Source: Rebecca billardiae RCC1528
Taxonomy: Eukaryota > Protista > Haptophyta
Direction of reading: 5' to 3'
DNA: 64,000 nucleotides
Assembly: GCA_965240325.2 (NCBI GenBank)
Contig: OZ251237.1
Coordinates: forward strand, 248,001 to 312,000
Shown: one piece after another, positions 269-3,748 of the stretch
Layout of the letters: each line of letters begins with the position of its first letter
How positions within the stretch are numbered: position 1 is the stretch's first letter
Notes under the pieces: generated by a model
The model's database searches: none
The model's input: the letters and a program-made list of their open reading frames with translations, nothing else
Told to the model about the DNA's origin: nothing
Position numbers and translations under genes: made by a program

Positions 269-2231
269 TTATGGTTGTATAACCGCTCGGTTATGCGGGT
301 ATAACTCACCGGTAGCCCTCATGAGGGCGGGCTGGCAGCCAGGGTCCGGCTGCCTGGAGGTTTTCCGGTCGTCAAGCCGAGCCAGGCCCGGATTGGGCGC
401 GGGCCTGGATTGGCTCAGCAGCTTGGCAAGCGATGCGCGTCTGGGTGCGGCCGCGCTCGCTGGCTGCACCCGCGGCGCGGCGGCCGGCGTGGCTGCTCTG
501 GTCACCGCTGCGCTGGTGGCTGCTCCTCCTCTGGGAGTTGTTTCTTCCAGGTGCGTGTGCGTCGGCGGTAGGCCGCCCTCAGCCCTCGCTCTCTCCACTC
601 GTGCACCTGCCCTGCTTGCTCTCTGCTTTCGATGGGGGCGCCTCGGAGCCGCTTCGAGGCGTCCCCGTCTGCAATCTTCTCATGCTCTATCTGCTTTCGA
701 TGGGGGCGCCTCGGAGCCGCTTCGAGGCGTCCCCGTCTGCAATCTATCTTCTCATGCTCTGCTTTCGATGGGGGCGCCTCGGAACCGCTTCGAGGCGTCC
801 CCGTCTGCAATCTTCTCATGCTCTGCTTTCAATGGGGGCGCCTCGGAACCGCTTCGAGGCGTCCCCGTCTGCAATCTTCTCCTGCTCTGCTTTCGATGGG
901 GGCGCCTGGGAACCGCTCCCAGGCGTCCCCGTCTGCAATCTTCTCACGCTTCGCAGTCTCGCTTGCCTTCATCGCCTGGCGGGTGGGTGCTGCTCTTTCC
1001 TTCTCTGCCGCCTCCTCTGCAGTCTGCCGTGCACTGCTGTGTGTGGGATGCGACCTGCTACCTTATCTGACGCTACGCGTGCGTGTCTCGCGCCTGCTTC
1101 CCGCCTGCGCCGCCGCCGCCGCGCATGTCTTCGTGCCCACTGTCTCATGCCGTCTGGATCGTCCTTACTCATACAACCCTGCGGGGAGCCCCTCTGGGCC
1201 TCTGCCGCCTTCGGTCCTCGCGCTACCCCTTCGGCGGCCTCGGCCTCTTCGGGCCCCCGGCCACCACCCCTGCGGGGTGTGGCATTCCACACCTCCTTCT
1301 GGGTGGAGGCCCTCGAGGCCTCTGCCTCCTGCGGCGCCGCGCTCTGCCCAAACTTGCGTTGGGGGGGGGCGTCGGCTGCCAGCGCCTGCGGTCTACGTGC
1401 TCCATCGAGTACTTCCTCTTCGGCGTCTAGGCGGTCATCGGCTTCTGTCGGCGTAGTTGCTCGAATGCATCGGCGAGTCCTTCCTGGTCGGCGTCGCATC
1501 CTGGACGGCTTCGGGGGTGTGACCTAGTCACCTCACGCGTTTATCAACGCGGCCCCCACCTCAATCTACTCTCATGTGGGTCTACCGAGTGAGTTATGGT
1601 TGTATAACCGCTCGGTTATGCGGGTATAACTCACCGGTAGCCCTCATGAGGGCGGGCTGGCAGCCAGGGTCCGGCTGCCTGGAGGTTTTCCGGTCGTCAA
1701 GCCGAGCCAGGCCCGGATTGGGCGCGGGCCTGGATTGGCTCAGCAGCTTGGCAAGCGATGCGCGTCTGGGTGCGGCCGCGCTCGCTGGCTGCACCCGCGG
1801 CGCGGCGGCCGGCGTGGCTGCTCTGGTCACCGCTGCGCTGGTGGCTGCTCCTCCTCTGGGAGTTGTTTCTCCCTGCCCTCCCACCCTGCTGGTTGCTGGG
1901 TGGGCATGGCCTTGGGTGCGCGCGGTGTCGGGGGGGTGGAGGCCCTCGAGGCCTCTGCCTCCTGCGGCGCCGCGCTCTGCCCAAACTTGCGTTGGGGGGG
2001 GGGCGTCGGCTGCCAGCGCCTGCGGTCTACGTGCTCCATCGAGTACTTCCTCTTCGGCGTCTAGGCGGTCATCGGCTTCTGTCGGCATAGTTGCTCGAAT
2101 GCATCGGCGAGTCCTTCCTGGTCGGCGTCGCATCCTGGACGGCTTCGGGGGTGTGACCTAGTCACCTCACGCGTTTATCAACGCGGCCCCCACCTCAATC
2201 TACTCTCATGTGGGTCTACCGAGTGAGTTAT
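269..2231. mobile_element. Non-autonomous split-direct-repeat element (A1-X-B1-A2-spacer-B2), PAT/Ngaro-like; alternatively a tandem dimer of a rolling-circle element
   Basis: A1 269-545 matches A2 1594-1870 (277 bp). B1 1301-1596 matches B2 1934-2230 apart from one SNP and one extra G. TTAT occurs at the left end, the B1/A2 junction and the right end. No credible ORF. Confidence 0.7.
621..947 (+). repeat. Five tandem 64-68 bp hairpin-forming repeats
   Basis: Unit CTGCTTTCGATGGGGGCGCCTCGGA(G/A)CCGCTTCGAGGCGTCCCCGTCTGCAATCTTCTCATGCT starts at 623, 691, 759, 823 and 887. Confidence 0.95.
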
Positions 2232-2330: not shown

Positions 2331-3602
2331 TCATCGAAAGTGCACGCGGCGGTCTGCACTCCCTGCAGGCACGGGCGGGGCGGGAGTGCCGTGAGCGCCA
2401 CGCGGCCGCGGAGCCGGTGCGCGGCCGACGAGCCCAGGAGTCGGGAGCGGGAGGTCCTTTGCCGTCTGCACGAGCGACTGGGCCACGACCAGGCACGCGC
2501 GGCCCAGCGTGAGGTGGCTCCGCCGCCGGAAGAAGGGCCGCTCGCACTCCACCGCCGCCGCCTCGATGCCGAGCATGCCCCACGTCATCAGGCACACGCT
2601 CAGCAGCGCGGGCAGGCCGCGGTCGTACAGCACGGGTAGCGGGCCGAGCATCAGGTACATCACGAGGAAGGTGCGCAGGTGCGCGACGTACACGAAGGGC
2701 AGGGGCGTGAGGTTGATGCGCTCCATCGCGCCGAAGCAGCCGGTCAAGCCCTGAACAAGCTCGTTGAGCCGGTGGTACACCATCGGGCCGAGGTGCTCGT
2801 GCCCCGGCGGCGTGGGCGCGCGCGCCACGGCGCCAATCAGCTCGCGCAGCCGGTTGAGCGCCGTGATCGGCTGGCACGGCGCCTCGAGCAGCTCGTTCGC
2901 CTCCTTGGCGCTCAGCAGCGGGATCAGCTCGTACGCGCGCTTCAGCTCATTCAGACTCGGTCGCAGGTAGTTCTTCGTCGCGACCGGCACGACGCCCAGC
3001 CAGCGCAGCATCGCGTTGCGCTCCGCGGGCGCATGCGCGCAGAAGACGCACGCCTCAGACGCAAAGGCGCGGCACAGCTCCACCAGCTTGCCGAGCGCAG
3101 CACGGGCGTCCCAGTACCGAACCGCGGCGCGGCTGAGCCGGAAGACCAGCAGGAAGCTCACCGTTCCGAGCACGTGCACGAACAGCTCGTCGATGGTGCG
3201 GATGATCATCTCGAAGATCGGCGTTGCCTGGCCGCGCTCTGTGAGGTCGAGGCCGCCGCCGTCACGCGGCCCGATGAGCACGGCGATGAGGACGGCCCAC
3301 ATCGTGACCGCGAGCCACGGCCAGATGATCAGATCGGCGTTGCGCCCGCGCGGGTCCACGACGACTTGCCACGATTCGCGCTCCCACACAATGATGTTGC
3401 CATCGGAGGCGATCAGCGCGTCGATGCGCTCGGCGTTGAGGAGCGCGTCGCACACCTCGTGGTGTGTCTCGGGTGGATGCGCCGGGCCAATGAGACCATC
3501 CTCGCTGTGCTCCGAATCCAAGTGTTTGAGCGGGAACCACTTCGAGCTCGTGTGCCGCAGCAGGCCCCTCGCCATCCAGCCGGCCGGGGCGGAATCTAGC
3601 AC
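2331..3602 (-). CDS. Bestrophin-family (YneE/VCCN/UPF0187-type) anion channel; true start uncertain
   Basis: Motifs LLVFRLSRAAVRYWDAR, MERINLTPLPFVYVAHLRTFL and GIEAAAVECERPF, plus hydrophobic TM segments. The frame stays open upstream to about 3755, and the first in-frame ATG is at about 3575. Confidence 0.9.
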   Translation of the reverse strand: MLDSAPAGWMARGLLRHTSSKWFPLKHLDSEHSEDGLIGPAHPPETHHEVCDALLNAERIDALIASDGNIIVWERESWQVVVDPRGRNADLIIWPWLAVTMWAVLIAVLIGPRDGGGLDLTERGQATPIFEMIIRTIDELFVHVLGTVSFLLVFRLSRAAVRYWDARAALGKLVELCRAFASEACVFCAHAPAERNAMLRWLGVVPVATKNYLRPSLNELKRAYELIPLLSAKEANELLEAPCQPITALNRLRELIGAVARAPTPPGHEHLGPMVYHRLNELVQGLTGCFGAMERINLTPLPFVYVAHLRTFLVMYLMLGPLPVLYDRGLPALLSVCLMTWGMLGIEAAAVECERPFFRRRSHLTLGRACLVVAQSLVQTAKDLPLPTPGLVGRAPAPRPRGAHGTPAPPVPAGSADRRVHFR

Positions 3603-3748
3603 CTCGCGTCCAGCGCGAGGGGCGTGCGGTCTACTACTACTGGTCTGGTGCCGGGTGGTGCCACCTTCTTCAACCTCGTGATCAGCAGCGGCGAGAACAA
3701 CTTTCGATTCGTCGAACCGTGCGTACCCACCCGGGCGGTATCTCCATA

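What the first reader, a model, noticed from the sequence alone, without database searches (positions are those of the whole stretch)
269..2231. Non-coding split-direct-repeat element (A-X-BA-B) with the same TTAT core at both ends and at the internal circle-junction-like site
Seen: A1 269-545 = A2 1594-1870; B1 1301-1596 ~ B2 1934-2230; a unique 63-bp spacer lies between A2 and B2; TTAT is at 269, 1594 and 2228; there is no TG..CA and no coding capacity. Known: an A..BA..B layout is the hallmark of PAT/Ngaro-type tyrosine-recombinase retrotransposons, which integrate through a circle by recombination at a short core, and the Chlamydomonas non-autonomous TOC1 also has split repeats and an internal tandem array. 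Inference: this is a very recent, miniature (2 kb) non-autonomous member mobilised in trans. The alternative is a head-to-tail dimer of an HUH rolling-circle element.
Basis: partly seen in the sequence, partly recalled or inferred. Interest (0 to 1): 0.85.

Follow-up and report, generated by a model that had tools for sequence, protein, structure and literature searches.

The report
Non-coding split-repeat retroelement family
This 2-kb stretch is one young copy of a protein-less jumping element present about 55 times in this GC-rich eukaryotic genome; its repeat layout and insertion sites match the known tyrosine-recombinase retrotransposons (Ngaro/PAT/TOC1 type), so it is a well-documented new family of a known kind.

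Summary

The element is not a local duplication. The genome holds 114 copies of its 5' end and 94 of its 3' end, about 55 elements on many contigs. They are 96-100% identical, and the order is always A-X-B-A-S-B, never the permuted order.

Full copies have no target-site duplication, and two sets of paralogous empty sites show exact insertion. The left flank resembles the element's own last six bases, AGTTAT.

A1 and A2, and B1 and B2, evolve in concert across subfamilies, as LTRs do. This argues for copying through a sub-genomic RNA and against rolling-circle or cut-and-paste movement.

The B|A junction folds into a strongly conserved 80-nt hairpin. A recombinase-encoding element in the same genome has the same layout, spacer and junction geometry.

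No autonomous partner with the same ends was found, and RNA evidence could not be obtained.

Earlier first-reader notes of this scan appear to describe the same family in other windows.

Verdict: a non-autonomous Ngaro/PAT/TOC1-like element, a new member of a known kind.

The parts
269..272 (+). Target-derived copy of the recombination core (TTAT here). It is flank, not element.
   Evidence: The four bases before GGTTG vary among 25 copies. Left-flank consensus is A-R-T-T-A-T.
273..545 (+). A1, the 5' split direct repeat
   Evidence: Identical to A2. 114 genome matches to its first 23 nt.
273..340 (+). Conserved terminal block of A (A positions 5-72), containing TATAAC motifs and the 3' arm of the junction hairpin
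   Evidence: No subfamily-level variable column here, against about 38 in A positions 73-256.
546..620 (+). Unique segment X1
   Evidence: Present once per long unit in all copies.
621..950 (+). Tandem array of five 64-68-nt units, each with a 17-bp hairpin
   Evidence: TRF gives period 64, 5 copies. Unit folds have z about -6. The fifth unit's left arm restores pairing in this subfamily only.
951..1300 (+). Unique segment X2
1301..1597 (+). B1, the internal copy of the 3' split repeat, ending in AGTTAT
   Evidence: The last 114 nt are invariant across subfamilies.
1571..1650 (+). B1|A2 junction hairpin. The last 27 nt of B pair with bases 29-53 of A (counted from its GGTTG start), with an inner ATAACC/GGTTAT hairpin.
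   Evidence: Folded as DNA: -25.4 kcal/mol, z -9.8, 0 of 200 shuffles as stable.
1598..1870 (+). A2, the internal copy of A
1871..1933 (+). Unique spacer S between A2 and B2
   Evidence: Kept at this place in every full copy. No match to X.
1920..1975 (+). 25-bp hairpin across the S/B2 boundary. Deletion and truncation end points of other copies cluster around it.
   Evidence: RNA fold z -5.2. Copies end at element positions 1640-1722.
1934..2231 (+). B2, the 3' terminal split repeat
   Evidence: 94 genome matches to its last 20 nt.
2226..2231 (+). Element's own copy of the core, AGTTAT
   Evidence: Invariant 3' end. Mirrored by the left-flank consensus.

Best explanation
This is a non-autonomous split-direct-repeat retroelement of the tyrosine-recombinase (DIRS order; Ngaro/PAT/TOC1-like) kind.

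Shown:
- It is a young dispersed family with a fixed A-X-B-A-S-B order.
- Insertion is exact and makes no target duplication.
- It inserts just after a target sequence that resembles its own last six bases, AGTTAT.
- The two A copies and the two B copies of each element stay identical to each other while the family diverges.

Inferred:
- A transcript lacking most of A1 and most of B2 is reverse-transcribed by enzymes supplied in trans.
- The missing ends are rebuilt from the internal B1-A2 copy, which keeps the repeats identical.
- The cDNA ends are brought together at a B|A junction held by the long junction hairpin.
- A tyrosine recombinase then exchanges strands within the short core shared by that junction and an AT-rich target. 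This leaves one core copy on each side and no duplication.

The source of RT and recombinase is not identified.
For: - **Dispersal and fixed order.** About 55 elements on many contigs at 96-100% identity. The order A-X-B-A-S-B holds in all 30 fetched loci, and no permuted A-S-B-A-X-B appears among the 100 listed 5' ends.
- **Concerted evolution.** A1 vs A2 within an element differ by 0.3%, against 1.7% between elements. B1 vs B2 differ by 0.1%, against 0.5%. At subfamily-level variable columns in A, the two copies of one element never differ; within-element differences are private. The 91%-identity subfamily shows 1 difference in 274 nt between A1 and A2.
- **Insertion.** No duplication flanks 15 full copies. 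Two independent sets of empty paralogous sites show exact insertion.
- **Target preference.** The left flank matches the element's terminal AGTTAT (Mann-Whitney p = 3.6e-7). The first base of the right flank is A in 11 of 19 copies. [quoted passage not shown]
- **Same layout in a recombinase element.** A 6.5-kb element carrying a tyrosine-recombinase ORF has the same A..BA-spacer-B layout, sits in (TA)n, and has a similar junction hairpin.
- **Recombinant forms.** Rare A-X-B and A-S-B forms look like solo-repeat recombinants, as reported for Ngaro (PMC8547959).
- **Conserved junction.** The junction region is invariant across subfamilies.
Against: - No element with these ends carries RT, RNase H or a recombinase. 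The 23-nt 5' end matches only this family, and none of the eight 5'-end matches (among the 100 listed) that have no element 3' end nearby lies within 10 kb of an RVT_1 hit.
- The only recombinase family detected has a different junction (GGACAC|GTGGCG) and no detectable RT.
- A double-stranded circle would carry two identical B|A junctions and should also give the permuted order, which is never seen. The intermediate is therefore not understood.
- Read on the opposite strand, the ends resemble the published Helitron2 layout.
- Gene conversion between repeats 1.3 kb apart could mimic concerted evolution.
Confidence: 0.75

Rival explanations
1. It is a head-to-tail dimer of a non-autonomous Helitron2-type rolling-circle element, read on the minus strand. 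A short unit (B'-S'-A') is followed by a long unit (B'-X'-A'), and the pair is copied as one piece when the first terminator is skipped.
For: - On the minus strand, the first 27 nt are repeated in inverted form 28 nt from the 3' end. That repeat is followed by a hairpin (ATAACC GAGC GGTTAT) and a 6-nt tail. Bao and Jurka describe a 3' ATIR 20-30 bp from the end, upstream of a hairpin (PMC3627910).
- Full copies have no target duplication.
- Copies truncated at what would be the 5' end exist, and some carry short direct repeats, as reported for Chlamydomonas Helitron2 one-ended events.
- Helitron_like_N ORFs exist in the genome.
- Earlier notes of this scan report Helitron2-type families here.
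Against: - The two units end in identical terminators, so monomers should dominate. Instead about 50 copies have the same two-unit order, and only one or two monomers were seen.
- Rolling-circle copying does not explain why A1/A2 and B1/B2 stay identical while subfamilies diverge by up to 9%.
- The terminal inverted repeat does not form the local 5' hairpin required of Helitron2 (fourth fold).
- The same layout occurs in an element that carries a tyrosine recombinase, not Rep/helicase.
Confidence: 0.1
2. It is a DNA-only tyrosine-recombinase transposon (Crypton-like, but with split repeats). It is excised and re-inserted as a double-stranded circle by the RT-less recombinase element seen in this genome.
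For: - The only recombinase-bearing split-repeat element I could read has no RT domain.
- Both families have TATAAC motifs just inside the 5' end.
- Core-sharing insertion without duplication fits any tyrosine recombinase.
Against: - Cut-and-paste does not explain about 55 near-identical copies or the concerted evolution of the repeats.
- Recombination between an end and the identical internal junction would shed monomer circles and lose S or X, yet every copy keeps both in one order.
- The junction cores differ: AGTTAT|GG here, GGACAC|GT in the recombinase element.
- There is no sequence similarity between the two families.
Confidence: 0.08
3. It is a local tandem duplication or satellite-like repeat without its own mobility.
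For: Variants with an extra unit exist: A-X-B-A-S-B-A-S-B in L018 and A-X-B-A-X-B-A-S-B in L031.
Against: There are more than 50 dispersed copies with unrelated flanks and precise, constant ends, plus empty paralogous sites.
Confidence: 0.01

Closest known systems
TOC1 of Chlamydomonas reinhardtii (non-autonomous DIRS-order retrotransposon)
   Same: Both are protein-less elements with split terminal repeats that depend on enzymes of other elements. TOC1 is called a non-autonomous DIRS retrotransposon in PMC9940879. From memory, not checked here, TOC1 also has a unique stretch between its last two repeat parts and internal tandem repeats.
   Different: TOC1 is about 5.7 kb (from memory) and this element is under 2 kb. 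There is no sequence relation, and the host is different. I could not read the original TOC1 paper here.
Ngaro and PAT-like retrotransposons (DIRS order)
   Same: They share the A1-[body]-B1A2B2 split direct repeats. Solo AB recombinants occur (PMC8547959; PMC13465315). A short core is proposed to be shared by junction and target (PMC7192593).
   Different: Those elements encode Gag, RT/RNase H and a tyrosine recombinase; this one encodes nothing recognisable. A 63-nt spacer lies between A2 and B2. Clade assignment is impossible without a protein.
DIRS-1 of Dictyostelium
   Same: Its sub-genomic transcript lacks most of both terminal repeats, and the ends are rebuilt from an internal region that is essential for retrotransposition. 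The concerted evolution and the conserved B|A junction here fit the same logic.
   Different: DIRS-1 has inverted terminal repeats and an internal complementary region. Here the repeats are direct, and the internal B1A2 junction with its own hairpin would play that part.
Helitron2 / Helentron non-autonomous elements
   Same: On the opposite strand the ends show an asymmetric inverted repeat followed by a 3' hairpin. There is no target duplication.
   Different: The other features do not match: no local 5' hairpin, a fixed two-unit order, concerted evolution of the repeats, and association of this layout with a recombinase gene rather than Rep/helicase.
TRIM/LARD (non-coding LTR retrotransposon derivatives)
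   Same: They are short, non-coding, terminally repeated elements moved in trans, and their repeats are homogenised at each cycle.
   Different: Those have whole direct LTRs with TG..CA ends and 4-6-bp target duplications. This element has none of these.

Membership tests
DIRS order, split-direct-repeat type (Ngaro/PAT-like) | Split direct repeats in the order A1-body-B1-A2-B2 | tested here: met
   the order is kept in all 30 loci. A 63-nt spacer between A2 and B2 is an addition.
DIRS order, split-direct-repeat type (Ngaro/PAT-like) | Insertion without target-site duplication, at a short core shared by the circle junction and the target | tested here: met
   No duplication in 15 full copies. 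Empty sites. Left flank resembles the terminal AGTTAT, p = 3.6e-7.
DIRS order, split-direct-repeat type (Ngaro/PAT-like) | Encodes RT/RNase H and a tyrosine recombinase, or, for a non-autonomous member, shares termini with an element that does | tested here: not met
   No Pfam domain in the element. No RT- or recombinase-bearing element with these ends. The search was limited because no further genome DNA could be fetched after (refusals).
DIRS order, split-direct-repeat type (Ngaro/PAT-like) | Replication through RNA, with terminal sequences rebuilt from the internal junction | tested here: inconclusive
   The evidence is indirect only: LTR-like concerted evolution of A1/A2 and B1/B2 and a conserved junction. 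RNA reads were not obtainable.
Helitron2 | 5' ATIR within 0-2 bp of the end that also forms a local 5' hairpin | tested here: not met
   On the minus strand the inverted repeat is terminal, but the terminal 17 nt stay unpaired in the fold of the B end (fourth fold). Definition from PMC3627910.
Helitron2 | 3' ATIR 20-30 bp from the 3' end, just upstream of a 3' hairpin | tested here: met
   On the minus strand the inverted repeat ends 28 nt from the end and is followed by the ATAACC/GGTTAT hairpin.
Helitron2 | Rep/helicase partner with related ends | tested here: inconclusive
   Five Helitron_like_N ORFs exist. The 26 kb fetched around two of them (L049-L051) shows no similarity to A, B, X or S. 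Their ends were not reached.
Helitron1 | 5'-TC and CTRR-3' ends, inserted between A and T | tested here: not met
   The ends are GGTTG... and ...AGTTAT.
LTR retrotransposon derivatives (TRIM/LARD) | Whole direct LTRs with TG..CA ends and a 4-6-bp target duplication | tested here: not met
Crypton | Recombinase-only DNA transposon without long terminal repeats | tested here: not met
   Long split repeats are present, and the copy number and concerted evolution point to replicative spread.

The most novel reading that the evidence does not exclude
Split-repeat elements of this genome may form a trans-complementation network in which the parts are spread over different families: protein-less elements (this one and a 4.6-kb one that shares the GTTAT|GG junction), a recombinase-only element without RT, and RT-bearing elements reported elsewhere in the genome. 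The long hairpin across the B|A junction would pair the 3' end of B with the sub-terminal part of A. That would let a linear single-stranded cDNA hold its own two ends together for joining, making it a direct-repeat counterpart of the DIRS-1 internal complementary region. It would also explain why only the end-made junction, never the internal one, is used for insertion.
Probability: 0.25. Interest if true: 0.55.

Novelty: new member of a known kind. Interest (0 to 1): 0.35.

Why it matters
Tyrosine-recombinase retrotransposons are the least understood retroelements, and only DIRS-1 has been tested experimentally. This family is small, young and abundant, and it has many informative copies. 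It provides a clean target-site logo, exact empty sites, LTR-like homogenisation of both split repeats, and a sharply conserved junction hairpin.

These features make it a convenient natural substrate for three questions: how split-repeat elements rebuild their ends, why the internal junction is not used for insertion, and which enzymes act in trans.

For genome annotation, it is a repeat family that standard LTR, TIR and Helitron finders would miss or mislabel.

Tried and rejected
- **Autonomous partner, by ends.** Exact-end patterns with up to 2 mismatches found only this family.
- **Autonomous partner, by recombinase.** PF00589 found one recombinase family in five copies. Searching with that family's own recombinase domain found no second family. 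It has different ends and no RT.
- **Autonomous partner, by RT.** RVT_1 gave 55 hits.
- **Autonomous partner, by junction pattern.** A degenerate pattern (GTTATGG..CGGTTAT, excluding this family) found only one more copy of the 4.6-kb non-coding element.
- **Similarity to the recombinase element.** A sensitive BLAST gave nothing significant.
- **The 4.6-kb insert in L031.** It has no Pfam domain and turned out to be another non-coding split-repeat element.
- **Homologues of the recombinase protein.** Only three were found, all unnamed. The PDB sequence search was blank. The Atlas pointed to eukaryotic recombinase and RT-recombinase clusters.
- **Truncated copies as cDNA ends.** Several are internal deletions that keep the terminal TTAT or GAGTTAT (L024, L017), so I did not build on them.
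- **Junction hairpin of the 4.6-kb element.** A similar shape is predicted but is not significant (z -1.4).
- **Earlier-findings search by sequence.** Blank.

Full report
**1. The observation**

- A1 (269-548) matches A2 (1594-1873). Identity really ends at 545/1870.
- B1 (1301-1597) matches B2 (1934-2231), apart from one extra G in a G-run and one G/A difference.
- A unique 63-nt spacer S lies at 1871-1933.
- A 64-68-nt unit is repeated five times at 621-950.
- TTAT stands at 269, 1594 and 2228, and there are no TG..CA ends.

**2. It is a dispersed, young family**

A search of the window's own genome (72 Mb in 41 contigs) with the whole element gave 56 matches. At least 20 are full length at 96-100% identity on different contigs.

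The first 23 nt of A occur 114 times and the last 20 nt of B 94 times. The reversed control patterns occur 0 times. This means about 55 elements, roughly two thirds of them with an intact 3' end.

In all 30 loci fetched the order is A-X-B-A-S-B. The spacing of the 100 listed 5' ends shows no case of the permuted order A-S-B-A-X-B.

Rare variants exist:
- a monomer A-X-B (L033);
- a decayed A-S-B (L032);
- A-X-B-A-X-B-A-S-B (L031);
- A-X-B-A-S-B-A-S-B (L018).

All of these can arise by unequal recombination between the repeats. Solo AB repeats are reported for Ngaro elements (PMC8547959).

**3. Ends and target**

Aligning the flanks of 25 copies shows that the constant 5' end is GGTTGTATAACC, at window 273. 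The constant 3' end is ...CCGAGTGAGTTAT. The four bases in front of GGTTG vary, so the TTAT at 269 belongs to the flank.

Fifteen full copies have no adjacent direct repeat.

Two copies sit inside other repeated sequences whose uninterrupted paralogues are in my loci. L007 can be compared with L012, L048 and L051. L012 can be compared with L006, L034, L056 and L031. In both cases the element is inserted exactly, with no base gained or lost. Only 1-2 nt of ambiguity remains, where the target ends in T or AT like the element.

The left flank has a clear consensus:

| Position | Base | Count |
|---|---|---|
| -6 | A | 17/25 |
| -5 | A or G | 17/25 |
| -4 | T | 14/25 |
| -3 | T | 12/25 |
| -2 | A | 18/25 |
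| -1 | T | 18/25 |

This consensus equals the element's own last six bases, AGTTAT. Similarity to that half of the junction is well above nearby control windows (p = 3.6e-7). The right flank shows only A at +1, in 11 of 19 copies. Three of the 25 copies lie in (TA)n tracts.

One core copy comes from the element and one, imperfect, from the target. That is the pattern proposed for DIRS-like elements, where a short sequence at the circle junction defines the insertion site (PMC7192593).

**4. The two A copies and the two B copies evolve in concert**

I collected 71 A and 63 B copies and aligned them.
- A1 and A2 of the same element differ at 0.3% of sites. A copies of different elements differ at 1.7%.
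- For B the figures are 0.1% and 0.5%.
- Subfamilies differ by up to 9% in A.

At the subfamily-level variable columns in A (one search counted 29; one search lists about 38 at positions 73-256), the two copies of one element never disagree. The within-element differences are private single changes. In the subfamily at 91% identity, A1 and A2 differ at 1 of 274 sites.

This is the behaviour of LTRs: at each round both copies are remade from one template. It fits a transcript that lacks most of A1 and most of B2, with the ends rebuilt from the internal B1A2 copy. In DIRS-1 the RNA lacks most of both terminal repeats (shown experimentally), and the internal region proposed as the template for rebuilding them is essential.

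Rolling-circle copying or cut-and-paste of a fixed dimer would not do this. Frequent gene conversion is the only other explanation.

The window copy has A1 = A2 and a single B1/B2 mismatch, so it is very recent.

**5. Conserved structures**

Bases 5-72 of A and the last 114 of B carry no subfamily-level variation, while the rest of A varies at about one site in five.

Across the B|A junction, the last 27 nt of B pair with bases 29-53 of A (counted from its GGTTG start), enclosing a small ATAACC/GGTTAT hairpin. Folded as DNA this gives -25.4 kcal/mol, z -9.8, with none of 200 shuffles as stable.

A 25-bp hairpin spans the S/B2 boundary (z -5.2). The end points of shortened copies cluster there, at element positions 1640-1722. 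Some of these copies are plain internal deletions, so I draw no mechanism from them.

Each tandem unit holds a 17-bp hairpin (z about -6). In the fifth unit, the left arm carries a change in this subfamily that restores pairing with the altered right arm.

**6. A recombinase element with the same design**

Pfam PF00589 finds five copies of one family, and searching with that family's own recombinase domain adds no second family. The copy in L047 (921-7445) has this layout:
- A of 449 nt;
- a body with a 976-aa ORF whose C-terminus matches Phage_integrase weakly;
- B of 264 nt;
- then A, a 92-nt spacer, and B.

It lies in a (TA)n/(CA)n tract. A second subfamily (L046) has diverged repeats but the same end motifs.

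Its junction folds in the same manner: the B end pairs with sub-terminal A, and an inner GTTATAAC hairpin follows (z -3.8).

It has no RT domain. It has no sequence similarity to the 2-kb element beyond TATAAC motifs, and a different junction, GGACAC|GTGGCG. It therefore shows that this layout goes with a tyrosine recombinase in this genome, but it is not shown to be the helper.

A third, 4.6-kb non-coding split-repeat element is nested in L031. It ends in GGTTAT and starts with GG, so it shares the GTTAT|GG junction with the present family.

**7. The rolling-circle alternative**

Read on the minus strand, the element begins with a 27-nt sequence that is repeated in inverted form 28 nt from the 3' end, followed by a hairpin. 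This resembles the Helitron2 layout of Bao and Jurka (PMC3627910). Helitron_like_N ORFs exist in the genome.

Several points count against it:
- The required local 5' hairpin is absent.
- Two units with identical terminators should yield mostly monomers, which are nearly absent.
- Concerted evolution is unexplained.
- The same geometry occurs in the recombinase element.

I give it about 0.1.

**8. What is missing**

No element with these ends encodes RT or recombinase.
- None of the eight 5'-end matches (among the 100 listed) that have no element 3' end nearby lies within 10 kb of any of the 55 RVT_1 hits.

One puzzle remains. A double-stranded circle would carry two identical junctions, yet only one permutation is ever inserted. 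This suggests that the inserted junction is the one made by joining the cDNA ends.

**9. Context**

The copy lies about 100 bp beyond the stop of a bestrophin-like ORF on the minus strand (2331-3602).

Earlier notes of this scan on the same genome describe Ngaro-like and DIRS-type coding elements and several non-coding split-repeat families. These include first-reader notes on a 1.96-kb "hairpin array" element and a 2.1-kb "SDR-1", which look like this family. I did not verify those notes. They call the organism a GC-rich alga, which I also did not verify.

**10. Verdict**

This is a real, well-defined, recently active non-autonomous split-direct-repeat element of the tyrosine-recombinase retrotransposon kind. 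It is a new family of a known kind. It has useful mechanistic detail but no identified helper.

Noticed in passing
L047:921-7445 (also L048, L046:3145-8799 minus strand): A 6.5-kb split-direct-repeat element in (TA)n tracts carries a 976-1286-aa ORF with a weak tyrosine-recombinase domain. It has no detectable RT or RNase H. Two subfamilies have diverged repeats but 99%-identical recombinase. A recombinase-only element with Ngaro-type repeats is unusual.
   Followed up: partly
L031:1850-6466 (minus strand): A third, 4.6-kb non-coding split-repeat element (A 462 nt, B about 121 nt, 74-nt spacer, long internal tandem arrays) is inserted 24 nt before the end of a copy of the present family. It has no duplication. 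Its junction ...GGTTAT|GGGG... shares GTTAT|GG with the present family.
   Followed up: partly
window:55244-62757: Ty1/Copia-type LTR retrotransposon on the minus strand. It has LTR-like repeats of at least 300 nt (99% identical over the 300 nt reported) and a 2236-aa ORF with RVT_2 and retroviral SH3-like domains.
   Followed up: partly
window:11108-19506 and 36755-44941: Two 98-100% identical stretches of about 8 kb lie 25.65 kb apart. Their G+C content (52-58%) is much lower than that of the surrounding 74-84% DNA, and they have few long ORFs. This could be a segmental duplication or a large repeat.
   Followed up: no
window:1361-1369 and 1994-2003 (G-run in B): The G-run in B is hypervariable between copies. 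Indels of up to about 13 G occur between B1 and B2 of one element (L016). It is the main source of B1/B2 length differences, and several copies break off just before the run in B2.
   Followed up: partly
L003 (G000:C12:523104-528063): One copy of the family lacks its last three bases. It abuts a recombinase element that is cut off at its position 3730, while (TA)n lies on the other side. This is probably a deletion after neighbouring insertions.
   Followed up: partly
L036-L040 (G000 C39, C7, C13, C23, C33): Five Helitron_like_N matches lie inside open frames of 2600-3640 aa, so Rep/helicase elements are present in this genome.
   Followed up: no
flanks of L006, L012, L024, L034, L056: Another repeat containing ...GTACAGTTTACTAAGAATAAGAGACGCACAC... 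is a recurrent landing site for this family and supplied the empty-site comparison. Its nature was not examined.
   Followed up: no
window:433-1527: An ATG-started frame of 332-402 aa stays open in all 15 full copies. It has no family match and reads the tandem units in different frames. It is probably an effect of high G+C and young age.
   Followed up: partly
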